Positions 1,320-62,921 of a stretch of DNA of 64,000 nucleotides are shown here, piece after piece. Each line of letters opens with the position of its first letter. Position 1 is the stretch's first letter. The DNA lies in IMG/VR virus record IMGVR_UViG_3300022866_000322, positions 1 through 64,000 of that record. One strand, 5' to 3'. Below the pieces are notes generated by a model that was not told the DNA's origin, ran no database searches, and was given only the letters and a program-made list of their open reading frames with translations. A program made the translations under genes and the position numbers.

Positions 1320-2450
1320 ATGTGGAGTAACCCAGTTACAATTGACAATGAGATTATGTCTATGGCAAAAGCTCTCGATTGTAATTGGGTAGGAGCAGTT
1401 AAAGTTAACGCACAGTCTGCATACGAGTATAATAACTGCCATAACAATGTTAGAATACACTCTAGTATATACGGCGGCAAGAAAGTAATTGGCTATTATT
1501 TTATAAAGGGGTTCAATGTTGTGCAGGCCATAAGACACAGTGTATGGCAAGATAACACGTTAGTAGACGTAACACCATATAAAGATAACAGAGAACACAT
1601 TATTTTTGCGTTAAGTTCAGACCAATCCAACGATTACTCGATACCTAACTGTTACTCTCAGTCTCTTGCTAAATATTTAAAACAGGAGAGTGACCGAATG
1701 TATTATGTATATCAAATAGTGGATCCGAGAAATAACCAACCATTTTATATCGGCAAAGGTACAGGTGACAGAGCAACAACACATTTACGGACTGTGTCCG
1801 ACACTAGAAATGTTTACAAAGAAAATAAAATCGCGAGTATAAGAAAGTCCGGAGCAGAGCCAGTAATTGAATACATTGCTGAAAACATATTAGACGAGGA
1901 ATTAGCGTATGATATCGAGGCCACTGCAATTAAAAAGTATGGTAGAAAAGGATATGACAAGAATGGCATATTAACCAATATATGTCCTGATGCCCGCCCA
2001 CCTAATCAGAAAGGTAGAACATACGAAGAAATATACGGGGTTAACAAAGCAAAGCAACAACGAGAATTAAGATCACGCCTTCAGAAAGAGAGAGGTGGAT
2101 ATGGCCCTAAGCAACACAGCATCGAAACACGAAAACGATTTAGTGAATTAAATTCTGGTGCCGGAAACCCAATGTACGGTAAAACACAAAAAGAAAGTAC
2201 CAAGGCATTAATTAGCAAAAAAGCAAAGTTGCGAATCGGTAAAAAAAATAAAAATAGCCACACTTACAGACTAACATCTCCAACAGGGGATGAGCACATA
2301 TTATACGGCGGTGAATCTACTGATTTCTGTAAAACACATAATTTAAGTTGGAGTACTCTTAAAATGCAAATTGAAAAGAAATGGGGTATTCCAAAAAAAG
2401 GCAAAACTAAAGGTTGGAAGTTAGAAGACTTAACAGCTACTAGAACATAA
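1320..2450 (+). CDS. Free-standing GIY-YIG (LEM3-like) homing endonuclease with NUMOD3, fused in frame to an unknown N-terminal domain; internal start at 1698
   Basis: YVYQIVDPRNNQPFYIGKG and LTN motifs; NPMYGKTQKESTKALISKK NUMOD3-like; internal AGGAG RBS and ATG at 1698. Confidence 0.85.
   Translation: MWSNPVTIDNEIMSMAKALDCNWVGAVKVNAQSAYEYNNCHNNVRIHSSIYGGKKVIGYYFIKGFNVVQAIRHSVWQDNTLVDVTPYKDNREHIIFALSSDQSNDYSIPNCYSQSLAKYLKQESDRMYYVYQIVDPRNNQPFYIGKGTGDRATTHLRTVSDTRNVYKENKIASIRKSGAEPVIEYIAENILDEELAYDIEATAIKKYGRKGYDKNGILTNICPDARPPNQKGRTYEEIYGVNKAKQQRELRSRLQKERGGYGPKQHSIETRKRFSELNSGAGNPMYGKTQKESTKALISKKAKLRIGKKNKNSHTYRLTSPTGDEHILYGGESTDFCKTHNLSWSTLKMQIEKKWGIPKKGKTKGWKLEDLTATRT
1662..1689 (+). 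promoter_or_regulatory. Hairpin with late-promoter motif in loop and RBS in 3' arm
   Basis: tctcttg (1662-1668) pairs with caggaga (1683-1689); TAAATA at 1670-1675. Confidence 0.6.
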
Positions 2451-2560: not shown

Positions 2561-2806
2561 ATGATTACAATATATTCAAAAAACAATTGTCCTTTTTGCA
2601 CAAAGGCCAAAGCACTACTAGAGATCAAAGGTATAAAGTACACCGAAGTAAACATTGAACAAGATGCAGATGCAAGGAAACGCATCGTTGACGCTGGCTT
2701 GCGTACAGTACCTCAGATTTATATCAATGAACAACTGCTACCTGGAGGATACAATGGGTTAGCAGATCAAACAACTGAATTTTTCGATAAGCTCAAGGAG
2801 AGTTAA
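2561..2806 (+). CDS. Glutaredoxin
   Basis: CPFC active site, RTVPQI, GGY; next to nrdAB. Confidence 0.93.
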   Translation: MITIYSKNNCPFCTKAKALLEIKGIKYTEVNIEQDADARKRIVDAGLRTVPQIYINEQLLPGGYNGLADQTTEFFDKLKES

Positions 2807-2807
2807 C

Positions 2808-3104
2808 ATGTTATTAGAAAATAGTAAATGGGAAGGACAGATCTGCGCACTAAAACTAATCACTGGGGAAGAGATAGTTGCAAAGATTACCAGCGAAACA
2901 GCAGATCACTACAACGTCGAGAAGGCATGCAATGTAGTACCTGGTCAGCAAGGTGTTGGATTAATTCAAGCACTGTTCACAGCAGATCCACATACCAGTG
3001 CGTCTATTCAAAAAAATCATGTTGTTATGATTGCTGAATGCATTGATCAAATCAAAACACACTATATCAAGACCACAACTGGGTTGGAAATTGTTAGGCC
3101 TTAA
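2808..3104 (+). CDS. Conserved phage protein, possible Sm-like/SH3 fold
   Basis: LKLITGEEIVAK motif; AGGAG RBS. Confidence 0.55.
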   Translation: MLLENSKWEGQICALKLITGEEIVAKITSETADHYNVEKACNVVPGQQGVGLIQALFTADPHTSASIQKNHVVMIAECIDQIKTHYIKTTTGLEIVRP

Positions 3105-3410
3105 CTAGCCGCCGGCAAACACAGTAGGTGATCCGCTTATCATAGCACCGGCGTCGGCACTATCACCTATTCTACCTACTCCAATACCATTGAGGAAAAC
3201 ACTACCTGAACCAGCATTTAAAAATGCCACGTGAGGTACGCATGAATCTCCACTGGGTATTAGGTGAGATACTGTCGGAGCACCAACTACTATAATGTCA
3301 ATACCGTTAGCATGAACAGTGCCGTCGTTGTTTGGCGAAGCAATGGTTGTTGTGGTATCACATCCATGTCCGGTTGTTAGTGTGTCACCTACTCTACATA
3401 TTGCTGGCAT
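3105..3410 (-). CDS. PAAR-motif spike tip protein (gp5.4-like)
   Basis: PAICRVGD...GH, GSGSVFLNGIGVGRIGD, SGSPTVFAG. Confidence 0.9.
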   Translation of the reverse strand: MPAICRVGDTLTTGHGCDTTTTIASPNNDGTVHANGIDIIVVGAPTVSHLIPSGDSCVPHVAFLNAGSGSVFLNGIGVGRIGDSADAGAMISGSPTVFAGG

Positions 3411-3526
3411 AATATGTATTTATACCAAAAAATTTGATTATACCCCACTATTATAGTATAATAGCAGTTGTTAACTTACATCCGACTCGCTTTTAAATAC
3501 TGGATGCGGTAAGATAGGAGAAAAAC

Positions 3527-4153
3527 ATGAAGCAAGATCTAACCAAATGGTCAAGATTAGTAACATTTTTTCTAGGAACGTGGCTGGTAGTATATGCAAT
3601 TATTGCAGTCACTAGTAATGTTAAAGCGCCAGCAAACCAAGCAGTGGGCGCAGAAACTATCGAAATTATTAACACAGCAGTAAAGCAATCGCCTGTTGAC
3701 ATGAGACAGGTTAGGCGAGAATTGGATTGCCTTGCTAGGAACATATACTGGGAAGCTCGTAGTGAGCCAGTTGAAGGTATGATTGCTGTGGCACAGGTCA
3801 CTCTTAACCGAGTGGCACACAACAGTTTCCCTGATGATATATGTGATGTGGTATATCAAGGCCCAACCAAAGCATCCTGGAAAGACAAGAGTGTATATTA
3901 TCCTGTAAAACATCGTTGCCAATTCAGTTGGTACTGTGATGGTAAATCAGATCGCATTTCGTCAGTTAATCAAACTATCTTTGACCGTTGCTATGAAGTA
4001 GCCAGACAGGTATTAATTGAAGGCAAAAGATTACCTGGCTTAAAACAAGCAGTATTCTATCATGCAGATTATGTTAGCCCTGTCTGGCGTTATCCTAAAT
4101 TGGCTAAAATAGGCACACACATATTTTACGGTGATAGAAACAGCCAAAACTAA
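3527..4153 (+). CDS. Cell wall hydrolase, SleB/Hydrolase_2 family, N-terminal membrane anchor
   Basis: CLARNIYWEARSE, VAQVTLNRV, CQFSWYCDGK, FYHADYVSP, IGTHIFY. Confidence 0.93.
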   Translation: MKQDLTKWSRLVTFFLGTWLVVYAIIAVTSNVKAPANQAVGAETIEIINTAVKQSPVDMRQVRRELDCLARNIYWEARSEPVEGMIAVAQVTLNRVAHNSFPDDICDVVYQGPTKASWKDKSVYYPVKHRCQFSWYCDGKSDRISSVNQTIFDRCYEVARQVLIEGKRLPGLKQAVFYHADYVSPVWRYPKLAKIGTHIFYGDRNSQN

Positions 4154-4196
4154 ACTGCTAACATAGTAGCCAAATAAATACTATTGGAGGTTTAGT

Positions 4197-4628
4197 ATGT
4201 CAAAGATTTTATTTTTTCTATTGTTTATTCCCACATTGTTATTCTCAGCTGATCTTCATCAGATGAACGAAAATGATCTGGCACTAGATATTACGAACTC
4301 AGACACAGTACAAAATGGTCGAGAGTGGTACGACAGACGTTGTTCCTTCTGTCATGGTGGCCAAGGCAAAGGTGGCAAAGGTCCTTGCTTAACATGTGGC
4401 AAGTTTACATACAGTTCAAATACCAACATGGGTATATTCACAACCATTAGTGTGGGCATTACCAATCAGAGTTTAGGCGGCACAATGGGTGCATTTGGTA
4501 CAACCATTGACGGTATGGATATAGTTGCTATTGTAACTTACTTACGGTCAGAAGAAAGACGCAGAATTGAGTCTGGTGAAATTAAAGATCCATACATTGT
4601 GCAAGAACAGATGGTCTTCCCGGAATAA
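4197..4628 (+). CDS. Periplasmic c-type cytochrome, cytochrome cL (MxaG/XoxG)-like
   Basis: Signal peptide, CSFCH heme motif, GKGP.L..KFTYSSNTNMGIFTTI, GTMGAFG distal Met. Confidence 0.75.
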   Translation: MSKILFFLLFIPTLLFSADLHQMNENDLALDITNSDTVQNGREWYDRRCSFCHGGQGKGGKGPCLTCGKFTYSSNTNMGIFTTISVGITNQSLGGTMGAFGTTIDGMDIVAIVTYLRSEERRRIESGEIKDPYIVQEQMVFPE

Positions 4629-7216: not shown

Positions 7217-7528
7217 ATGCAGATATTATACAAAAAAGAACTAGAGCAATTGCTGGATAAAATTGCTACAGGAAAAACTGACGTTAACCGGCTCCAAGAG
7301 GACGAACTAGAGGAGTTGATGGACTACATTCACGAGCGAGCTGAGGAGTTGGATGATCCTGACTATGACGAGATTAAGCAGCAGTTACTCCAGTTGTTTG
7401 ACCTGCTCGGACATGTTATTGATAACAGGATTGAAGCGGAAGATAATGAAAAGTTTATAGACTCTATACGAGGAAGTATACAAAGAGGCAATTTTTACTT
7501 TGAATTGGGCAGTTTTATAGTGCATTAA
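7217..7528 (+). CDS. Hypothetical acidic protein
   Basis: ORF. Confidence 0.55.
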   Translation: MQILYKKELEQLLDKIATGKTDVNRLQEDELEELMDYIHERAEELDDPDYDEIKQQLLQLFDLLGHVIDNRIEAEDNEKFIDSIRGSIQRGNFYFELGSFIVH

Positions 7529-7634
7529 CTAAATATACCAAAATCAGTTAAACTGTCACATAACTACTCTCTTATTCCTTTAAATATCCTGTAGCCGCAA
7601 TTTAATCGCGGCTCATTAAATGGAGATATAAAAA

Positions 7635-7868
7635 ATGGAAATATTAGCCACAATCAAAACGTGGGCAGGTGAATTAGCTGAAGTAGTTGTTTCAGTCCTA
7701 GCATTAAGTATTGTTTTAGAACTATTAATGGGCAACTCAGCAATTCCGTTCTTGCCAACCCCAAGTGTTATCGGTAACGTGACAGATGTTGTTAACACAT
7801 TGGGTGGTCAAGGTCTAGTAGGCTTGTTAGCTGTTTGGGTCTTGTATACCGTTTGGAAAGCTAAGTAA
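7635..7868 (+). CDS. Small membrane protein
   Basis: Two hydrophobic segments; GGAG RBS. Confidence 0.7.
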   Translation: MEILATIKTWAGELAEVVVSVLALSIVLELLMGNSAIPFLPTPSVIGNVTDVVNTLGGQGLVGLLAVWVLYTVWKAK

Positions 7869-7895
7869 TCGCTTTTTAAATTTTTCAAGTTAATC

Positions 7896-7924
7896 AATAA
7901 ACCCGCTGGAGCGGGTTTATTTTT
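7896..7924 (+). terminator. Intrinsic terminator
   Basis: aataaacccgc-tgga-gcgggtttattttt. Confidence 0.75.
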
Positions 7925-7938
7925 GACTAAATATTAGT

Positions 7939-8286
7939 ATGAGAATAACAGACATTATACGCACTGTGCTAGACATAGTTGACCAAGCAGAACAGCCAGC
8001 ACAGGAACCTATGATTGCTATCGCTGTCAGTGAGCCAGACCAAGAGACCATGGACATGCAAACACTAGCTGGCATATTAAAAGTAGGCGATGATGGCGCA
8101 TGTGATGTCTGCGGACGTGATCCATGTGGTTGCGACAATGCAGGATATGCCAACGAGCCTAAGGAAATTATCGCTCCTATGCAAGCCGCATTTCCTTCAG
8201 GTGACGATGTACACAAGGCTAAGAACCCTGCAGACATTAGAACTGATGCAACCAGCATGTATCCAGATTACCAAGCAAGGAAATAA
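7939..8286 (+). CDS. Hypothetical late protein with CxxC-x3-CxC motif
   Basis: TAAATA-N5-ATG; CDVCGRDPCGC. Confidence 0.65.
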   Translation: MRITDIIRTVLDIVDQAEQPAQEPMIAIAVSEPDQETMDMQTLAGILKVGDDGACDVCGRDPCGCDNAGYANEPKEIIAPMQAAFPSGDDVHKAKNPADIRTDATSMYPDYQARK

Positions 8287-22945: not shown

Positions 22946-24181
22946 ATGCAAATAGGTTTTATAGGGTTAGGTAAATTAGGGCTTCCATGTGCTGAAGCAA
23001 TGGCCACACAGTATTCTGTGACTGGCTACGATATTTACAACAAAACAAGTGACACCATAAAAATATCACCCTCACTGGAAGGTGCAGTTAAAGGCAAAGA
23101 CATTGTATTCGTAGCAGTGCAAACTCCACACGATCCTGTGTACGACGGAAGTCGACCTATTACACATTTAGCAAACAAAGACTTTGACTATACTATAGTT
23201 AAACAAGTTTTAACAGACATAAACCAACATGTTGGACAGGAAACACTAGTAGTGCTAATCAGCACAGTATTACCCGGCACTACAAGGACACAGTTGCGTG
23301 ATTGTGTGTCAGAAGCACGTTTTGTTTACAACCCCTACCTTATTGCTATGGGTAGCGTTGCATGGGATATGGTTAATCCTGAAATGGTTATTATTGGTAC
23401 AGAAGATGGATCAGAAACAGGTGACGCAAAAGAACTTATTAACTTTTATAAGCCGTTAATGGAAAATGATCCCAAGTATAATGTTGGCACATGGGATGAA
23501 GCAGAAAGCATAAAGATATTTTACAACACATTCATCAGCACAAAAATTGGCCTGGTAAACATGATACAGGATGTTGCAGTGAAGAACGGTAACATTGATG
23601 TTGATGTGGTTACAGAAGCATTAGCAGGTAGCACACTGCGTATTGTAAGTCCCAAGTACATGAAAGCAGGCATGGGAGATGCAGGACCTTGCCACCCAAG
23701 AGACAACATTGCACTGCGTTGGTTAGCAGAAAGATTAGATCTCGGATACGATATATTTGACACTGTGATGCATGCTAGGGAAAAACAAGCAGAAAATGTT
23801 GCCAGTTACCTAACAGCACTGCAAAAGAAAAACAACATGCCGGTACGCATCATGGGCAAAGCATACAAGCCCGACGTTGATATACTGGATGGCAGTTATA
23901 GTTTGTTGATTGGGTATTACCTGGAAAAACAAGGTACAGACTTTGCTTATGTTGATCCGCTTACTAACGATATAGCAACCGATACCGACCAACCTGTTAT
24001 AGCATTCCTGGCGCACAACAGACAAGTCACATATGGATATACTGGAAATAAAAAGCGACAAGAATTCTATTGTGATGTTGCTACAGGAAGCATCATAGTT
24101 GATCCATGGAGAACATATCCGAAAATAGACAACAACTATAAAGTAATACATTATGGAAACACTAGATTTAAAACAGTTTAA
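22946..24181 (+). CDS. UDP-glucose/GDP-mannose dehydrogenase family
   Basis: GFIGLGKLG, AVQTP, STVLPGT, AESIKIFYN, GPCHPRD, AYKP. Confidence 0.92.
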   Translation: MQIGFIGLGKLGLPCAEAMATQYSVTGYDIYNKTSDTIKISPSLEGAVKGKDIVFVAVQTPHDPVYDGSRPITHLANKDFDYTIVKQVLTDINQHVGQETLVVLISTVLPGTTRTQLRDCVSEARFVYNPYLIAMGSVAWDMVNPEMVIIGTEDGSETGDAKELINFYKPLMENDPKYNVGTWDEAESIKIFYNTFISTKIGLVNMIQDVAVKNGNIDVDVVTEALAGSTLRIVSPKYMKAGMGDAGPCHPRDNIALRWLAERLDLGYDIFDTVMHAREKQAENVASYLTALQKKNNMPVRIMGKAYKPDVDILDGSYSLLIGYYLEKQGTDFAYVDPLTNDIATDTDQPVIAFLAHNRQVTYGYTGNKKRQEFYCDVATGSIIVDPWRTYPKIDNNYKVIHYGNTRFKTV

Positions 24182-26394: not shown

Positions 26395-27628
26395 TACACA
26401 AATAACTGATATAGTAGACGGAATAGTAAAACAAGTAGAAGCAGGTGTAGCAAAAAAAGTTGATCAGTTAATAGCTGATTCAATTAAAGCTCGCTTATCT
26501 ACCTTTAACTTTACTGATGCAATCCAAAAAGCGGCCACAGAAGCACTGGATAGAAAAGCCTCCGAGTATAATGTTGATAGCAAAAAACTTGAAACACGTA
26601 TTTTTGACCGGATCAACGAGACTATTACGGAAGTACAAAAACAAACAGATCAAACTGTTAAAGAAACAGTGGCTCAACGTATCCAAGAAATAGACTTTGG
26701 TAAAGCAGTAGTTAACGCAACTAGTATAGTAGTCAAAGATCAATTGAATGAAGTTATATTTCCTGATTCAAGTATTAAACCTGAATCGTTAGATTTGTCT
26801 ACATTTAAGTTTAGTGGAGACAACATACACGGTGGTATAATCACAGAATTCAGCAGTACTGGTATCGACGATCGTGCTACCAACATTGCAGTTACTATAT
26901 TAGATGATGTAACAGTTGTTGAAAACAATTTGCTTACAAAAGATTTAACTGTACAAGGTAACGTAACCATAAATGGAACACTGGACAAGGATTGTAGTTT
27001 TTATCAAGAACTGATTGATACTACATCAACCAACACTGTTAGTAAACTTAACAAAACCTTATTTGATGGATTTAGTAAAACTGTGTTTAATACAATTAAA
27101 GACAAAGGACTTGACCTAAACAAAATAACCATAAACGGCAAAGATGTTGTTATTGGTAATGCACTAGGATCCAACATAACCAATAGTAATTTACAAGAAC
27201 TGGGTATGCTCAAAGAATTGCAAGTGTCCGGCGAAGCATTTTTGAGTGGATCATTGTATACTGTTAAGGGTCGCGTAGGCGTTAACACGTTTGAACCAAG
27301 TGCGGCGTTAGCAGTATGGGACCAAGAAATTGAAATTACTACAGGTAAGAAGGAAACAGACATAGGACGCATAGGAACTCCTAGGAAACAGTCGTTGGTG
27401 CTTAGTGCAAACAACAAAAACAATATTGTGTTAAACACAGACGGAAGTACAAAAGTTGACGATTTACGCATAGGGCAAGCCATGCGATTTACAGAAGGCA
27501 ATCGAGCGCCAAACTATGCCAGTACAAAAGGACATGTAGTCTGGAACAACAACCCTAGTCTTGGCGGACCAATGGGATGGATCTGTTTAGGGTTAGCCAA
27601 CTGGGCAAACTTTGGCATAATTGACTAG
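26372..27628 (+). CDS. Hypothetical, possible fibre-like virion protein (start probably 26384)
   Basis: N-terminal helical region; beta-rich C-terminus ending GWIC...W..FG. Confidence 0.6.
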   Translation: MTVSMDLNTQITDIVDGIVKQVEAGVAKKVDQLIADSIKARLSTFNFTDAIQKAATEALDRKASEYNVDSKKLETRIFDRINETITEVQKQTDQTVKETVAQRIQEIDFGKAVVNATSIVVKDQLNEVIFPDSSIKPESLDLSTFKFSGDNIHGGIITEFSSTGIDDRATNIAVTILDDVTVVENNLLTKDLTVQGNVTINGTLDKDCSFYQELIDTTSTNTVSKLNKTLFDGFSKTVFNTIKDKGLDLNKITINGKDVVIGNALGSNITNSNLQELGMLKELQVSGEAFLSGSLYTVKGRVGVNTFEPSAALAVWDQEIEITTGKKETDIGRIGTPRKQSLVLSANNKNNIVLNTDGSTKVDDLRIGQAMRFTEGNRAPNYASTKGHVVWNNNPSLGGPMGWICLGLANWANFGIID

Positions 27629-28932
27629 TGGCCAATCAAAAAGTATTTTGCAGTGTACCTTGGAGCAATCATCACTTCTACTGGGATGGTTCCTACGGTG
27701 TATGTAGTAGCGAAAGTAAGCGGCCCAACAAAGGCGAAAGTTTAAACAACACAAGTTTAGTACAATGGTATGACAGCGATACTATGCAAGACTTTAGACG
27801 CAGAGTATTGTCGGATCAACCGTTAGAAGAATGCAGTGTATGTTATAAAGAAGAAGCACAAGGTTACCAAAGTCGTAGGATCAAAGAGAACTACAAACTG
27901 GGCATATTTACAGAACATACCAGTAATGCATTCCAACAAAGTTTTGAACAAAGTACATGGCGCGAAAAGTTTCATGCGGACGGAACTACTGATGTGTTAC
28001 CTATAGACTGGCATATAGACTTGGGAAACGAATGCAACTTTGCATGTAAGATGTGCATTCCAGAGGCTAGTAGTAAAATAGCAAGTGCATATAGATCCTG
28101 GGATATCGAGTACAATAAGAAACCGAACTGGGTTATAGATAAACAAAGTTGGGAACAGTTGCTAACTAACTTAGACACTGTTAAAGATCGCCTTAACAGA
28201 GTGCATGTCATTGGTGGCGAGCCTTTGATAAACAAAAGATTCCATCAACTTATAGACTGGTTACTGGAAAATAATTATCACCATATTAGTATAAGCACAG
28301 TGACCAACGGCACTAATGTAAATTTAGAGCTAGTAGAAAAACTTAAACAGTTTAGATTAGCACATTTAGAAATAAGCGCAGAAAGTATTAACCAAACAAA
28401 TGATTACATTCGTCAAGGTTGCGATTACGTTGGACTGTGGAAAACTATACACGAACTTGTTGAGTTGCAATCAGACAAGTTTCAGGTAGTACTTAGATCA
28501 GCGCCACAGTTGCTTAGTGTGAATGATTATTATCAGTATTTAGATAAAGCATATAGTCTAGGGCTTGCTGTTGATAGTGTGCCACTAACTTACCCTTCAT
28601 ACATGGCAGTGAATGTGCTACCTTGGGATATCAGACAACAACTAAAACCTAAGTATCAACAGCTACTAGATAAATTGCAAACAAATGTAGATCAAACAAG
28701 TTTCGAAACTTTAGCAGTAGGAAGGGATACATCTAGGCTTTCACAAAAGTTAGCCAGAGAATGCCGCGGAGTGATCACAATGTTAGATAGTGAAGCACCC
28801 CATAACGTAGAAGAACTAAGAGTAGAGCTGATTCAATGGCTACAGCGTTGGGACAAAAAATACAACTATAACGCTATTGCACTTTACCCACAGTACAAAG
28901 ATTTTTTGAAAAGTTATGGATACTCTGTATAA
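27628..28932 (+). CDS. Radical SAM enzyme with N-terminal twitch/SPASM-like cysteines
   Basis: FCSVPW, CSVC, CNFACKMC, GGEPL, TNGT. Confidence 0.9.
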   Translation: MANQKVFCSVPWSNHHFYWDGSYGVCSSESKRPNKGESLNNTSLVQWYDSDTMQDFRRRVLSDQPLEECSVCYKEEAQGYQSRRIKENYKLGIFTEHTSNAFQQSFEQSTWREKFHADGTTDVLPIDWHIDLGNECNFACKMCIPEASSKIASAYRSWDIEYNKKPNWVIDKQSWEQLLTNLDTVKDRLNRVHVIGGEPLINKRFHQLIDWLLENNYHHISISTVTNGTNVNLELVEKLKQFRLAHLEISAESINQTNDYIRQGCDYVGLWKTIHELVELQSDKFQVVLRSAPQLLSVNDYYQYLDKAYSLGLAVDSVPLTYPSYMAVNVLPWDIRQQLKPKYQQLLDKLQTNVDQTSFETLAVGRDTSRLSQKLARECRGVITMLDSEAPHNVEELRVELIQWLQRWDKKYNYNAIALYPQYKDFLKSYGYSV

Positions 28933-42687: not shown

Positions 42688-42709
42688 AAAAGGGCCTCTG
42701 GGCCCTTTT
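42688..42709 (+). terminator. Intrinsic terminator
   Basis: aaaagggcc-tctg-ggccctttt. Confidence 0.75.
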
Positions 42710-42725
42710 CTAGTAAATACAAGTT

Positions 42726-42990
<265 letters not shown>

Positions 42991-43015
42991 GCAGGGCTTT
43001 CGGGCCCTGCTTTTT
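42991..43015 (+). terminator. Intrinsic terminator of tmRNA
   Basis: gcagggc-tttcgg-gccctgc-ttttt. Confidence 0.85.
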
Positions 43016-43035
43016 CTTTAGTTCTAGGATTTAAA

Positions 43036-43512
43036 ATGGCTATAGCGATGCAATCATTACCATATGTTTATAAACTACCCGATGGTACATATATTCACGT
43101 TACTATGCGACAGTATGGCGGTATTGCGTTAAGTGGAGAAGCACTTGAGGACTTTAACAGTGACATGGCTAGATTAAACGTAGTAGAAAAGGCCCATTTA
43201 GGCAAATACCAAGTACAAAGAGAAACAATAGAAGGAACCGTTAACATAAACGGACAGTCTTACCCTAAAGTACCACTATTAAAATCTACGTATCCTAATG
43301 AATCAGAGTTGCCAGACTTCAGTGATGATTACTTTAGTATTATGTGGAAATGGGGTACTATAATGACACAAGACCCCAATATTAGGTACCATGCTCCAGG
43401 AGCATCAGGTAATAGTTACGTCAATGAAAAAGATCCCTGCATCAAAGAAGTTGGCACATATGGCGACAAGCATAAAATGTGTACATGGTCAACTATTACT
43501 AATGTACAGTAA
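43036..43512 (+). CDS. Hypothetical protein
   Basis: ORF. Confidence 0.55.
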   Translation: MAIAMQSLPYVYKLPDGTYIHVTMRQYGGIALSGEALEDFNSDMARLNVVEKAHLGKYQVQRETIEGTVNINGQSYPKVPLLKSTYPNESELPDFSDDYFSIMWKWGTIMTQDPNIRYHAPGASGNSYVNEKDPCIKEVGTYGDKHKMCTWSTITNVQ

Positions 43513-44000: not shown

Positions 44001-45206
44001 ATGAATAAAACTTTCTGTATCCTTCCTTGGACGCATTTCTTTCACGACGCTACCGGTAAAGTCTCGCCCTGTTGTAATGCTAATTGTAGCAGAACGGACG
44101 GCGATCAAACCTCTGATTACGGGAACATGCGAGATTATGATACTCACATGGACATAATGAATCAGGACAACTTTAATACGTTACGACTTAATATGTTGGA
44201 AGGTAAAGAGACTACTGAATGCCAGCCCTGTTACGACATAGAAAAGCATGGTGGAAAAAGTTTTAGACAAAGCAAGAACACAATGTTGGATCAAATGATC
44301 ACCATGGACGAGATTGAAGAAATGACCAATCCAGATGGTAGTCTCAAAGACTTTAACATGCGATATTGGGACATTAGGTTTAGCAACGTATGTAATCTAA
44401 GTTGTCGTATGTGTGGTCCAGAATACAGCCATACCTGGGCAAAAGAAGTTGATAAACGATTCAATGGTAAACACATAGTCAAAGCACACGAGTCAGAAGA
44501 ATGGTCCGACATGATCAGTAAGTATGGCCCATTGGATGAGTTATATGACATATACTTTGCTGGTGGTGAAGTTATGTTCCAGAAAGAACACTGGCAGATG
44601 CTGGATCACCTAATAGACATTGGTAAAACAGATGTTATGGTGATGTATGTTACCAATTTAACCAAGTTGGATTACGATGGATACAAGTTACTAGACTACG
44701 TACCCAAGTTCCGCGACGTGACATTTACTGTTAGTATGGACGGCACAGGCGACCTATTGGAGTATATTAGGTGGGGTAGCAAATGGGACCAGATAGTTAA
44801 GAATCTAGATACTGTTAACAATTTGCCTAACGTACACTTGCGAGTAAATCATGTTACCATGTGGTACAATGTTCTTGCATTACCTAAAACGTTAGACTTT
44901 TTGTATGGTAACGGTTATCTCAAAGAACCGTACCAATTGGATCTATGCATTGCACAAGAACCTGAGAATCATGTGGGTGCTCTACCTGAGGATCTCAAAT
45001 TAGTAGCAATAGACAAAATAAAGCATAGCACGTACTATGTCAATGGATTGTTAAAAGACAAACTAGATGCAATATGCAATGCAATGATGACTGTGGAATA
45101 TCCTTTACCAATCGAACATACCGAGACCTTAGACACACGTCGCGGTTGTAATATCGTAGACGTTCTGCCAGAGATTGAACCTTATTACTTAATTGGTGAA
45201 AATTAA
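44001..45206 (+). CDS. Radical SAM enzyme with N-terminal twitch/SPASM-like cysteines
   Basis: FCILPW, PCC, CQPC, CNLSCRMC, AGGE, TNLT. Confidence 0.92.
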   Translation: MNKTFCILPWTHFFHDATGKVSPCCNANCSRTDGDQTSDYGNMRDYDTHMDIMNQDNFNTLRLNMLEGKETTECQPCYDIEKHGGKSFRQSKNTMLDQMITMDEIEEMTNPDGSLKDFNMRYWDIRFSNVCNLSCRMCGPEYSHTWAKEVDKRFNGKHIVKAHESEEWSDMISKYGPLDELYDIYFAGGEVMFQKEHWQMLDHLIDIGKTDVMVMYVTNLTKLDYDGYKLLDYVPKFRDVTFTVSMDGTGDLLEYIRWGSKWDQIVKNLDTVNNLPNVHLRVNHVTMWYNVLALPKTLDFLYGNGYLKEPYQLDLCIAQEPENHVGALPEDLKLVAIDKIKHSTYYVNGLLKDKLDAICNAMMTVEYPLPIEHTETLDTRRGCNIVDVLPEIEPYYLIGEN

Positions 45207-60724: not shown

Positions 60725-61909
60725 ATGAAAAAAACAAATTTGCATTGCGCCCTGTCTCATATGAACATGGCCATCCAAAATGAGACCGACTACTGTAGTT
60801 GTAACGTCAACACAGAGAGTTGGAAAGACAATCAACATGATGTTATGAGAGTACCCACGTCTCCACCAAAAACAGCGTGGAACAGTTACACAAGGAAAAT
60901 GATTAAAATTGCATTAGACAAGGGAGTTAAGCACCCTGGATGCAGTCCCTGTTGGCAAGCTGAAGATGCTGGTCGTGTATCGGTCCGACAACAGTTTAAT
61001 TTGGCACTAGACGGAATACAACCTTTAGAGAATCAACCCAGATCCATTATATTAAAACCAGGAAACGTGTGTAACATGGCTTGCCGTATGTGCAACCCTG
61101 CTACTAGCACCAGGTGGTATCAAGATGCATACAAGTTAGAAGAACCTGATGTTGACTACAACGAGTACACAAAGAAATTTGAAATAATTAGAAACAGTTT
61201 CGGAAAACAAAACACTGAATTTTGGGATACTCTTAAAGAATGGATACCTGAGTTACGTGTGATTTACATTTATGGCGGGGAACCATTCATGAATCCGCAA
61301 ACCTGGGATTGGTTAGAGCATGGTATTAAAGTAGGCGCCGCTAAAGATATATACATTGGTTTAACGACCAACCTAATGATATGGAATGAAAAATACTTAG
61401 ATATTTTAAAACAATATAAAGCAGTTGATTTAAACGTAAGCCTAGACTCATCGGATGCAACAGAAATGGAATATGTTAGGCACTTAGCAGATGCAGATAC
61501 CTTGTTCAGAAATGGCAAAAAGGTAAATGATTATTTTGCAAGTTACGATAATGTGTCTCCATGTATAACGTATACACTAACATCATTGAACATGCACAAT
61601 ATAGATTATCATGCGCAACGACTAAAAGAATTGACTGGAATAGACAAGTTGATATTCAATAATGTGTATACTCCCGAGATCTACGACTTTAGACACTTAC
61701 CAAACCCAATCAAAGAAGAACTAAAAAGTGAAATTAAAGACCCAGAAGTAAACAGCATAATAAATCAAATTATCCCAGGGTGTGATAAACTGTGGCCTGA
61801 ATTTTGTGCGCATACAGACAAGTTAGATGCAATACGAGGGCAAAGTTTTCGGGAGGCTTTTCCGGAGTGGTGGGCTAAGTTAGAACCATATTGGTATAAC
61901 TATGAGTAA
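60725..61909 (+). CDS. Radical SAM enzyme with N-terminal twitch/SPASM-like cysteines
   Basis: HCAL, CSC, CSPC, CNMACRMC, GGEPF, TTN. Confidence 0.9.
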   Translation: MKKTNLHCALSHMNMAIQNETDYCSCNVNTESWKDNQHDVMRVPTSPPKTAWNSYTRKMIKIALDKGVKHPGCSPCWQAEDAGRVSVRQQFNLALDGIQPLENQPRSIILKPGNVCNMACRMCNPATSTRWYQDAYKLEEPDVDYNEYTKKFEIIRNSFGKQNTEFWDTLKEWIPELRVIYIYGGEPFMNPQTWDWLEHGIKVGAAKDIYIGLTTNLMIWNEKYLDILKQYKAVDLNVSLDSSDATEMEYVRHLADADTLFRNGKKVNDYFASYDNVSPCITYTLTSLNMHNIDYHAQRLKELTGIDKLIFNNVYTPEIYDFRHLPNPIKEELKSEIKDPEVNSIINQIIPGCDKLWPEFCAHTDKLDAIRGQSFREAFPEWWAKLEPYWYNYE

Positions 61910-62482: not shown

Positions 62483-62572
62483 GGAAGTGTGGCCGAGTGG
62501 CTTAAGGCGGGAGATTACTAATCTCTTGTACGTGCAAACGTACCGTGGGTTCGAATCCTACCACTTCCGCCA
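62483..62572 (+). tRNA. tRNA-Ser (anticodon ACT)
   Basis: GGAAGTG/CACTTCC acceptor, G73, CCA, long variable arm, loop TT-ACT-AA. Confidence 0.9.
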
Positions 62573-62602
62573 AATGTTTTAACAAGATACAATGGAGATA
62601 GT

Positions 62603-62758
62603 ATGACAGTTAATAAGAAGAACAGCCCATTAACATATGAATCAGGCAAGCTAAGACTCGGTCCATTAAGCACAGGAAAACTAGAAGAAATGTTGAAAAC
62701 TTGTAGACCAAGACACAAGAACAAAATTATTAACGAGATAGCAAAGAGAAGTAAATAA
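62603..62758 (+). CDS. Small basic protein (51 aa) between tRNAs
   Basis: GGAG RBS. Confidence 0.55.
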   Translation: MTVNKKNSPLTYESGKLRLGPLSTGKLEEMLKTCRPRHKNKIINEIAKRSK

Positions 62759-62764
62759 ACGCAT

Positions 62765-62841
62765 GCTGGTGTAGCTCAGTTGGTAGTAGCGCCTGCTTTG
62801 TAAGCAGGATGTCGGGAGTTCGAGTCTCTCCTCCAGCACCA
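62765..62841 (+). tRNA. tRNA-Thr (TGT)
   Basis: Cloverleaf, loop TT-TGT-AA, CCA; one T-T mismatch in acceptor stem. Confidence 0.92.
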
Positions 62842-62846
62842 ACCTT

Positions 62847-62921
62847 GTCCGGTTCGTCTATCGGTTAGGACTCGGGATTTTCATTCCCGCAAGAGGGGTT
62901 CGACTCCCCTACCGGATGCCA
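62847..62921 (+). tRNA. tRNA-Glu (TTC)
   Basis: Cloverleaf, loop TT-TTC-AT, CCA. Confidence 0.93.

What the first reader, a model, noticed from the sequence alone, without database searches (positions are those of the whole stretch)
4197..4628. Phage-encoded cytochrome cL/XoxG-like protein
Seen: signal peptide, CSFCH, then GKGPCLTCGKFTYSSNTNMGIFTTI...GTMG. This recalls cytochrome cL (GKLGPGL...WTYPSNTTDVGLFATI...GMMG), the dedicated electron acceptor of PQQ methanol dehydrogenase. It also has a second CxxC (CLTC) without His. Inference: sustains periplasmic electron flow from a PQQ dehydrogenase during infection.
Basis: partly seen in the sequence, partly recalled or inferred. Interest (0 to 1): 0.7.

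Follow-up and report, generated by a model that had tools for sequence, protein, structure and literature searches.

The report
Phage cytochrome c for PQQ dehydrogenase
A large T4-like marine phage carries a working-looking copy of the small haem protein that its likely hosts (small-genome marine Burkholderiales) use to take electrons from a lanthanide-type PQQ alcohol dehydrogenase, so the phage probably keeps this periplasmic energy route running during infection.

Summary
ORF 4197-4628 (+) encodes a 143-aa secreted monohaem c-type cytochrome (CSFCH, axial Met97) with a second Cys pair (CLTC).

The closest single-domain solved relatives are cytochromes cL, though weakly (32-39 bits). The gene-context evidence is stronger: in all 9 informative cellular loci, orthologues (56-74% identical) are the last gene of a PQQ-dehydrogenase / MoxJ-like binding protein / cytochrome operon, the same order as xoxF-J-G. 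The dehydrogenase has the lanthanide-type D-Y-D motif and the vicinal Cys-Cys ring.

- **Origin:** the phage clade is sister (SH-aLRT 99) to orthologues from 1.2-2.1 Mb uncultured Burkholderiales.
- **Selection:** dN/dS is about 0.05, and the gene's GC matches the phage.
- **Spread:** a second T4-like phage group carries a 60% identical copy.
- **Binding model:** a complex model with a host-clade dehydrogenase scores 0.70 against 0.00 for controls, through the cytochrome's C-terminal MVFPE tail.

Three limits apply. The protein is not a member of the curated cL family (41 bits against a 147.8 cut-off). The partner enzyme is no closer to XoxF than to PedH. No RuMP marker was found in the host clade, so methanol is unproven as substrate. 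The CxxC is an invariant family hallmark of unknown role. The same phage also encodes a c551-type cytochrome.

The parts
4186..4190 (+). Ribosome-binding site GGAGG, 6 nt upstream of the ATG
   Evidence: Read directly from the sequence
4197..4628 (+). Gene for a 143-aa periplasmic monohaem c-type cytochrome of the 4-Cys, PQQ-dehydrogenase-linked family
   Evidence: ORF; Pfam above cut-off; 352 homologues; dN/dS about 0.05 among phage copies
4197..4250 (+). Signal peptide, residues 1-18, ending F-S-A before Asp19
   Evidence: Hydropathy above 2 over residues 1-17. The cellular homologues also begin with hydrophobic leaders. No dedicated predictor was available, so the cleavage site is inferred
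4341..4355 (+). Haem-attachment motif C49-S-F-C52-H53
   Evidence: Invariant in alignment A1. His53 aligns with chain residue 69 of cL 2c8s, recalled as axial His69
4386..4397 (+). Second Cys pair C64-L-T-C67, inside the invariant GGKGPCLxCG loop that follows the haem motif
   Evidence: Invariant in A1 and present in 119 of 120 homologues. It lies in the loop that contacts the haem and binds metal ions in Methylophaga cL (PMC9728263). Its role was not tested
4485..4487 (+). Met97, the predicted sixth haem ligand, in GGTMGAFG
   Evidence: Invariant. It aligns with chain residue 109 of 2c8s (recalled as axial Met109) and with the GMMG methionine of 2d0w
4602..4625 (+). C-terminal tail, residues 136-143 (QEQMVFPE), the predicted docking peptide for the PQQ dehydrogenase
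   Evidence: All confident contacts in the complex model involve residues 136-142. The tail occurs in 21 of 109 family members, including both phage clades. The dehydrogenase surface at the docking site differs between partners of tailed and tail-less cytochromes
3527..4153 (+). Upstream gene for a cell-wall hydrolase (Hydrolase_2/SleB-like), 43 nt before the cytochrome gene and probably co-transcribed with it
   Evidence: Pfam PF07486, 83 bits. No terminator-like site lies between the genes on the + strand. Co-transcription is inferred

Best explanation
The gene is a phage auxiliary metabolic gene. It was captured from a small-genome marine Burkholderiales host and encodes the periplasmic monohaem cytochrome c that, in those bacteria, is the dedicated electron acceptor of a lanthanide-type PQQ alcohol dehydrogenase.

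The proposed mechanism has four steps. First, the protein is exported by Sec, and the host Ccm system attaches haem to C49/C52, with His53 and Met97 as axial ligands. Second, it docks on the host dehydrogenase, at least partly through its C-terminal MVFPE tail. Third, it accepts electrons from reduced PQQ. Fourth, it passes them towards a terminal oxidase, possibly through the c551-type cytochrome that the same phage encodes. Extra copies made during infection would keep or raise energy gain from periplasmic alcohol oxidation while host gene expression declines.

Shown: it is a c-type cytochrome, it is orthologous to the operon cytochromes, it resides in phage genomes, and it is under purifying selection. 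Inferred: haem loading, the electron-transfer partner, the substrate alcohol, and the benefit to the phage.
For: - **Cytochrome identity:** Pfam hits lie above cut-off and the haem ligands are invariant.
- **Solved relatives:** the best single-domain solved relatives are cL 2d0w and 2c8s, c551i 2gc4 and Methylophaga cL 7c90. They are also the top Foldseek hits, although those are not significant.
- **Operon context:** all 9 informative cellular loci of the orthologue group have the order PQQ-DH (579-590 aa), SBP_bac_3 (280-291 aa), cytochrome. OM43 has the same order as xoxF-J-G (PMC5120137).
- **The dehydrogenase:** it passes TIGR03075 with 549-590 bits against a cut-off of 480. It has D-Y-D as in XoxF and PedH, where MxaF has D-Y-A. 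All seven checked have the vicinal Cys-Cys.
- **One cytochrome per enzyme:** host-clade genomes have no canonical cL, and their other PQQ-DH has its own, different cytochrome.
- **Origin:** the phage clade is sister to the 179-183 aa Burkholderiales clade at SH-aLRT 99.
- **Selection and composition:** dN/dS is 0.04-0.06 at dS up to 0.9. The cytochrome is 92% conserved where NrdB is 73%. GC matches the phage.
- **Complex model:** ipSAE is 0.70, 0.70 and 0.66 against a best control of 0.00. That mark was reached by 51 of 78 solved complexes and 2 of 108 mismatched pairs. The runs agree in at least 78% of contacts and the partner pLDDT is 84.
- **Docking site:** the dehydrogenase surface at the predicted site co-varies with presence of the tail.
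- **Second carrier:** the same phage genome has a c551-type cytochrome.
Against: - Similarity to cL is weak and equal to that for CcoP-like domains.
- The fold search gave no significant match, and the model is only moderate at pLDDT 72.
- The 221-kb phage record holds no PQQ dehydrogenase or MoxJ-like gene, so the partner must come from the host, which is inferred only from phylogeny.
- A roughly 48% identical paralogue in the same bacteria is not next to a PQQ-DH.
- The complex model is confident only for the tail, and says nothing about haem-PQQ geometry.
- RNA evidence consists of short metatranscriptome contigs that could derive from DNA.
Confidence: 0.6

Rival explanations
1. It is a general respiratory carrier. 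The cytochrome simply raises the periplasmic pool of c-type carriers that feed cbb3- or aa3-type oxidases from the bc1 complex, with no special link to a quinoprotein.
For: The Pfam best hit is Cytochrome_CBB3, and PRK14486 and CcoP score as high as MoxG. The phage also carries a c551-type cytochrome, a classic general carrier. A paralogue is not PQQ-linked.
Against: The orthologue group is PQQ-DH-linked in 9 of 9 informative cellular loci. CcoP scores are sums over two or three haem domains, with best domains of 18-23 bits against about 39 bits for cL as one stretch. The complex model passes with the dehydrogenase.
Confidence: 0.2
2. It hijacks or decoys the partner. The phage protein binds the host PQQ dehydrogenase through the conserved tail in order to divert electrons to a phage-specified route, or to block the enzyme, and not simply to supplement the host cytochrome.
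For: The phage copy lacks the roughly 35-residue N-terminal insertion of its nearest cellular relatives. The tail and the predicted docking are retained. The phage has its own c551-type acceptor.
Against: All haem ligands and family-invariant residues are kept under strong purifying selection, as expected for a working carrier. The N-terminal insertion is also absent from most cellular family members.
Confidence: 0.1
3. It has a thiol-redox or metal-handling role centred on the invariant second CxxC, with the haem secondary.
For: C64 and C67 are as conserved as the haem cysteines. The paralogue lies next to a DCC1-like thiol-disulfide oxidoreductase gene.
Against: There is no precedent that I know of. 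One paralogue has lost one of the two cysteines. The operon context points to electron transfer.
Confidence: 0.05
4. It is an electron donor for the fatty-acid-desaturase-family enzymes encoded next to it in related phages.
For: In the 92% identical phage group the cytochrome gene directly follows a FA_desaturase gene, with two more nearby.
Against: This phage record has no FA_desaturase gene, yet it keeps the cytochrome. By established knowledge, desaturases of this family take electrons on the cytoplasmic side, while this protein has an export signal. Cellular orthologues are never next to desaturases in the operon.
Confidence: 0.03

Closest known systems
Cytochrome cL (MxaG) of methylotrophs (PDB 2c8s, 2d0w, 7c90) and Paracoccus c551i (2gc4)
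   Same: Both are secreted monohaem class I cytochromes of similar size. They are the best single-domain sequence matches and the top fold matches. The His and Met ligands align. Both are encoded with a PQQ dehydrogenase and a MoxJ-type binding protein. For Methylophaga cL, a flexible C-terminal end has been proposed to contact partners (PMC9728263).
   Different: It scores only 41 bits on TIGR03872, whose cut-off is 147.8, with about 25% identity. It has an invariant extra CxxC in the post-haem loop, where cL has Gly and Asn/Asp. The known cL disulfide ties the C-terminus to helix alpha2 instead. The partner is not an MxaFI enzyme.
XoxG, the cytochrome of lanthanide-dependent XoxF methanol dehydrogenase (xoxF-J-G operon of OM43, PMC5120137)
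   Same: The cellular orthologues have the same operon order of dehydrogenase, SBP, cytochrome. The partner dehydrogenase has the lanthanide-type D-x-D motif.
   Different: The partner is as close to PedH/ExaA (337 and 303 bits) as to XoxF (301 and 289 bits). No hexulose-phosphate synthase above cut-off was found in 41 genomes of the host neighbourhood. Methanol is therefore not established as substrate.
Cytochrome c550 PedF/ExaB of Pseudomonas PQQ ethanol dehydrogenases
   Same: The functional logic is the same: a dedicated soluble cytochrome for a PQQ alcohol dehydrogenase.
   Different: It is a different sequence family. TIGR04494 scores 13.6 bits against a cut-off of 122.
Phage auxiliary metabolic genes for electron carriers, such as cyanophage plastocyanin and ferredoxin (from my own knowledge of the literature)
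   Same: Both are host-derived small redox carriers kept in T4-like marine phages under purifying selection.
   Different: This one is a c-type cytochrome that needs the host haem-attachment machinery, and it is tied to PQQ/lanthanide alcohol oxidation in a heterotroph. My searches found no report of this. There were no homologues among 50,697 deposited phage genomes and no PHROG match.

Membership tests
Class I c-type cytochrome (Pfam PF13442 / PF00034) | Profile score above the curated cut-off | tested here: met
   36 bits against 27, and 24.3 bits against 21.3
Class I c-type cytochrome (Pfam PF13442 / PF00034) | A CxxCH haem-attachment motif and a distal Met ligand | tested here: met
   C49, C52, H53 and M97 are invariant and align with the corresponding cL residues
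Class I c-type cytochrome (Pfam PF13442 / PF00034) | Export to the periplasm and covalent haem | not testable with these tools
   A hydrophobic leader is seen. Haem loading needs a haem stain or mass spectrometry
Cytochrome cL / MxaG (NCBIfam TIGR03872) | Equivalog HMM score of at least 147.8 bits | tested here: not met
   41.4 bits for the phage protein. All 31 aligned members match, but only weakly (best E-value 3.5e-13)
Cytochrome cL / MxaG (NCBIfam TIGR03872) | Gene linked to a PQQ methanol/ethanol-family dehydrogenase and a MoxJ-type protein | tested here: met
   Met for the cellular orthologues in 9 of 9 informative loci. The phage itself carries only the cytochrome
Cytochrome cL / MxaG (NCBIfam TIGR03872) | Accepts electrons from the dehydrogenase | not testable with these tools
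   There is only a complex model: 0.70 against a best control of 0.00, with confident contacts limited to the tail
XoxG (partner of XoxF) | The partner dehydrogenase belongs to a XoxF clade | tested here: inconclusive
   The lanthanide-type D-Y-D motif is present, but PedH is the nearest solved relative and XoxF is not closer
PedF/ExaB cytochrome c550 (TIGR04494) | HMM score of at least 122 bits | tested here: not met
   13.6 bits
CcoP, cbb3 oxidase subunit III (TIGR00782) | A dihaem, membrane-anchored subunit with an HMM score of at least 179.95 bits | tested here: not met
   36.7 bits. The protein has one CxxCH and is 143 aa. PDB CcoP scores are sums over several domains
4-Cys methanol-related cytochrome (TIGR03874) | HMM score of at least 161.75 bits | tested here: not met
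   14.3 bits
Phage auxiliary metabolic gene | Sits inside a bona fide phage genome, has a host-derived homologue and is under purifying selection | tested here: met
   The genome has Gp23 capsid, RNR, ligase and tRNA genes. The gene is found on 13 IMG/VR contigs and on the phage contigs L006-L009 carrying the 92% identical P0001 (recorded on 50 contigs). It is sister to a cellular clade. dN/dS is about 0.05
Phage auxiliary metabolic gene | Expressed during infection | tested here: inconclusive
   Short contigs from three metatranscriptome libraries cover 4448-4609 at 93-99% identity. DNA carry-over is not excluded

The most novel reading that the evidence does not exclude
Marine T4-like phages carry a two-cytochrome periplasmic relay: this cL-like 4-Cys cytochrome plus a c551-type cytochrome. 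The relay would plug the host's lanthanide-dependent PQQ alcohol dehydrogenase directly into respiration. That would make these the first viral genes of lanthanide/PQQ-dependent metabolism. The 4-Cys family would be a new class of quinoprotein cytochrome that recognises its enzyme through a C-terminal docking peptide and uses a loop disulfide in place of the metal site of cL.
Probability: 0.3. Interest if true: 0.75.

Novelty: new variant of a known kind. Interest (0 to 1): 0.55.

Why it matters
Volatile alcohols are a large carbon and energy flux in the surface ocean. Lanthanide-dependent PQQ dehydrogenases are the main known route for their oxidation (PMC11996626). If phages of abundant small-genome Burkholderiales carry the dedicated cytochrome of such an enzyme, viral infection would actively sustain this periplasmic energy route. 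It would also add c-type cytochromes to the marine phage auxiliary gene repertoire, and it would give a compact, strongly conserved handle for three things:

- identifying the hosts of these large uncultured phages;
- studying how a quinoprotein recognises its cytochrome;
- learning the function of an uncharacterised, widespread 4-Cys cytochrome family.

Tried and rejected
- **Deposited phages:** DNA and protein searches of 50,697 deposited phage genomes gave no match, and PHROGs gave no family. There is no isolate to compare with.
- **Fold search:** Foldseek against the PDB ranked cL first, but at E about 0.05 and TM 0.37-0.44, so I do not count it as independent evidence.
- **Host name:** the tools give no family or genus for genomes reached through loci. 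A literature search on BAL58 gave nothing usable. The host is described only as uncultured Burkholderiales of 1.2-2.1 Mb.
- **Host as a methylotroph:** no hexulose-phosphate synthase above cut-off was found in 41 genomes, so a Methylophilaceae-type host was rejected.
- **Partner genes in the phage:** no PQQ-DH gene, no FA_desaturase and no aminotransferase-fold ALA synthase were found in the 221-kb record, which is only 63% complete.
- **Desaturase link:** rejected on protein topology and because it is absent from this phage.
- **Single origin of both phage clades:** marginally rejected, with AU p = 0.046 and a log-likelihood difference of 49. It is supported by the contrast of 23% NrdB identity with 60% cytochrome identity, but it is not secure, because both phage groups are T4-like.
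- **Second clade in IMG/VR:** an exact peptide pattern search found nothing.

Full report
**What is there.** The window carries an ORF at 4197-4628 on the + strand, 143 aa long. A GGAGG site sits 6 nt before the ATG, and the ORF starts 43 nt downstream of a cell-wall hydrolase gene. The product begins with a hydrophobic leader ending F-S-A. It contains CSFCH at residues 49-53, a second Cys pair CLTC at 64-67, and GGTMG with Met97. Pfam places it in the class I cytochrome c families above their cut-offs. The short overlapping ORFs in other frames have no support.

**Is it a phage gene?** The window is the first 64 kb of a 221,342-bp IMG/VR virus record that CheckV estimates at 63% complete. The record has a Gp23-family major capsid gene scoring 327 bits. 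The window holds RNR subunits, a GIY-YIG/NUMOD homing endonuclease, a PAAR protein, a DNA ligase, several radical-SAM genes, three tRNAs and a tmRNA. It is a large T4-like myovirus. Copies of the cytochrome at 89-100% identity lie on 13 other IMG/VR contigs. A 92% identical protein, P0001, is recorded on 50 contigs, and the phage contigs read (L006-L009) show the same RNR, glutaredoxin and PAAR neighbourhood. The gene's GC (40.0%, GC3 36%) matches the phage at 39.7%. Pairwise dN/dS among phage copies is 0.04-0.06 with dS up to 0.9. Between the two phage subgroups the cytochrome is 92% identical while NrdB is 73%. The gene is resident, functional-looking and strongly constrained.

**What kind of cytochrome?** By sequence alone the answer is weak.
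- With the single sequence, the best solved relatives are cytochromes cL 2d0w and 2c8s, Paracoccus c551i, and Methylophaga cL 7c90, at E 6e-7 to 2.5e-5. CcoP comes after them.
- With a 31-member family profile, CcoP chains top the whole-sequence list at 40-44 bits. Those scores sum two or three haem domains, whose best domains reach 18-23 bits. The cL chains score 36-39 bits as one stretch.
- NCBIfam gives 41.4 bits to the cL equivalog TIGR03872 (cut-off 147.8), 42.1 to PRK14486 and 36.7 to CcoP. PedF and the 4-Cys methanol-related family are far lower.
- An AlphaFold model reached pLDDT 72 and is low in the haem loops. It finds cL first in the PDB, but not significantly.

So the protein is cL-like. 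It is not a member of any curated quinoprotein-cytochrome family.

**The evidence from gene context.** The protein has hundreds of cellular homologues at 55-74% identity, mostly from Burkholderiales metagenome-assembled genomes. Every informative cellular locus I opened shows the same three-gene unit. These were P0008, P0102, P0039, P0063, P0085 and four species-representative genomes, G001-G004. The unit is a 579-590 aa PQQ dehydrogenase, then a 280-291 aa SBP_bac_3 protein, then the cytochrome. It is usually followed by dut and dfp on the other strand.
- The dehydrogenase passes the methanol/ethanol-family model TIGR03075 with 549-590 bits against a cut-off of 480.
- The binding protein's best named hits are the MoxJ-type families, below their cut-offs.
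- The order matches the xoxF-xoxJ-xoxG operon described for marine OM43 (PMC5120137).
- The dehydrogenase carries the D-Y-D motif that in XoxF (D-Y-D) and PedH (D-F-D) supplies the extra lanthanide ligand, where Ca-dependent MxaF has D-Y-A or D-F-A.
- All seven partners checked also have the vicinal Cys-Cys pair of cytochrome-linked quinoproteins.
- The same genomes have no canonical cL. Their best matches to the cL model are this family.
- Their second PQQ dehydrogenase (604 aa) is followed by its own, unrelated cytochrome c.

The pattern is one dehydrogenase, one dedicated cytochrome. The phage copy corresponds to one specific pair.

**Limits of the methanol reading.** The partner enzyme is as similar to PedH and ExaA (337 and 303 bits) as to XoxF (301 and 289 bits). 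None of 41 genomes around the nearest cellular relatives has a hexulose-phosphate synthase above cut-off. A roughly 48% identical paralogue in these bacteria is not PQQ-linked. It lies by a DCC1-like thiol-disulfide oxidoreductase gene and a DUF423 gene. The substrate alcohol is therefore open, and the link to a PQQ enzyme applies to the orthologue group only.

**Origin and host.** In a maximum-likelihood tree rooted on the paralogues, the phage clade groups at SH-aLRT 99 with a clade of 179-183 aa proteins. That clade includes P0008. Orthologues of like identity (68-74%) come from uncultured Burkholderiales of 1.2-2.1 Mb, G001-G011. These bacteria have about 44% GC at the locus, against 40% in the phage. 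I infer that they, or close kin, are the hosts and the source of the gene. The phage protein lacks a roughly 35-residue N-terminal insertion found in that cellular clade.

**A second phage lineage.** P0075 and P0094 (60% identical to the window protein) lie on other T4-like contigs, next to a T4-type spanin gene and a different RNR. Their NrdB is only 23% identical to the window's. Forcing all phage copies into one clade costs 49 log-likelihood units, with AU p = 0.046. Two captures, or transfer between phages, are favoured but not secure.

**Mechanism.** I modelled the host-clade dehydrogenase with the mature phage cytochrome and haem.
- The score (ipSAE) was 0.70, 0.70 and 0.66, against a best control of 0.00.
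- In the tool's calibration that mark was reached by 51 of 78 solved complexes and 2 of 108 mismatched pairs.
- The runs share at least 78% of contacts, and the partner pLDDT is 84.
- All confident contacts involve residues 136-142 of the cytochrome (the tail QEQMVFP) and dehydrogenase residues 187-192 and 226-238.

This tail is present in 21 of 109 family members, including both phage clades and their nearest cellular clades. In a small, non-independent sample, dehydrogenases paired with tailed cytochromes keep AAIDADTGAPAWK at the docking site. This holds even at 77% overall identity. Those paired with tail-less cytochromes, at 75% overall identity, differ at 5-6 of the 13 positions. This fits a docking-peptide mechanism, but the model says nothing reliable about the haem-PQQ path.

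**The second CxxC.** C64 and C67 are invariant in the orthologue group and lie in the loop just after the haem motif. In Methylophaga cL the equivalent loop contacts the haem and is stabilised by bound metal ions. The known cL disulfide sits elsewhere, between the C-terminus and helix alpha2 (PMC9728263). My inference is a structural disulfide that stiffens this loop. A redox or metal role is not excluded.

**Other support.** The same phage genome encodes, at about 66.5-66.9 kb and outside the window, a 146-aa c551/c552-type cytochrome with a hydrophobic N-terminus. It scores 85 bits (E 4e-23) against P. stutzeri c551, and host-clade genomes hold homologues at 43-53% identity. By analogy with the methylotroph chain of dehydrogenase, cL, cH and oxidase (established knowledge), the two phage cytochromes could form a relay. 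This is speculative. Short contigs from three metatranscriptome libraries cover 4448-4609 at 93-99% identity. That hints at expression but does not show it.

**Novelty.** Searches of the paper library found no report of a phage xoxG or cL-type gene, or of viral genes of PQQ/lanthanide alcohol oxidation. The marine lanthanide survey does not mention viruses or cytochromes. The kind of thing, a host-derived electron carrier in a marine T4-like phage, is known. The carrier, its pathway and the uncurated 4-Cys family are new. I rate it a new variant of a known kind, of moderate to good interest.

Noticed in passing
G000 contig about 66477-66917 (+), outside the window; L070:1294-1734: A second phage c-type cytochrome of 146 aa, with a hydrophobic N-terminus and a CVACH motif. 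It is clearly c551/c552-type (85 bits to PDB 1dvv). Host-clade genomes have homologues at 43-53% identity.
   Followed up: partly
L048-L050 and L067 (metagenome contigs): A second T4-like phage group carries a 60% identical member of the same cytochrome family, next to a T4-type spanin gene and a Grx-NrdB fusion. Its NrdB is only 23% identical to the window's.
   Followed up: partly
L006-L009, locus coordinates 2783-4409 and 7262-7999: The 92% identical phage relatives carry three FA_desaturase-family genes, one immediately upstream of the cytochrome gene. None is found in this 221-kb record.
   Followed up: partly
window 42697-43042 (+): A phage-encoded tmRNA with the tag peptide ANENSYFEEFALAA. 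tRNA-Ser, tRNA-Thr and tRNA-Glu genes lie at 62483-62921.
   Followed up: no
window 1320-2450 (+): A GIY-YIG / NUMOD3 homing-endonuclease-like gene lies between nrdB (192-1319) and the glutaredoxin gene (2561-2806). It is absent at this position in the L006-L009 relatives.
   Followed up: partly
window 27628-28932, 44001-45206 and 60725-61909 (+): Three separate radical-SAM-domain ORFs (PHROG 14086), plus a UDP-glucose dehydrogenase-like gene at 22946-24181. This is an unusual load of modification or metabolic genes.
   Followed up: no
L053:7240-7764, L054:7313-7780 and L055:7089-7601: A roughly 48% identical paralogue of the cytochrome in the same Burkholderiales genomes is not PQQ-linked. 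It lies beside a DCC1-like thiol-disulfide oxidoreductase gene, and in two of the three loci a DUF423 gene. Most copies keep the second CxxC.
   Followed up: partly
L033:1426-3808: The host-clade genomes have a second PQQ dehydrogenase (604 aa) without the D-x-D pattern picked up by my motif search. It is followed by its own unrelated 146-aa cytochrome c.
   Followed up: partly
window 3105-3410 (-): The PAAR-motif gene (24 bits, just under the Pfam cut-off) is on the minus strand here, but on the plus strand in the L006-L009 relatives. This indicates a local rearrangement around the cytochrome module.
   Followed up: no
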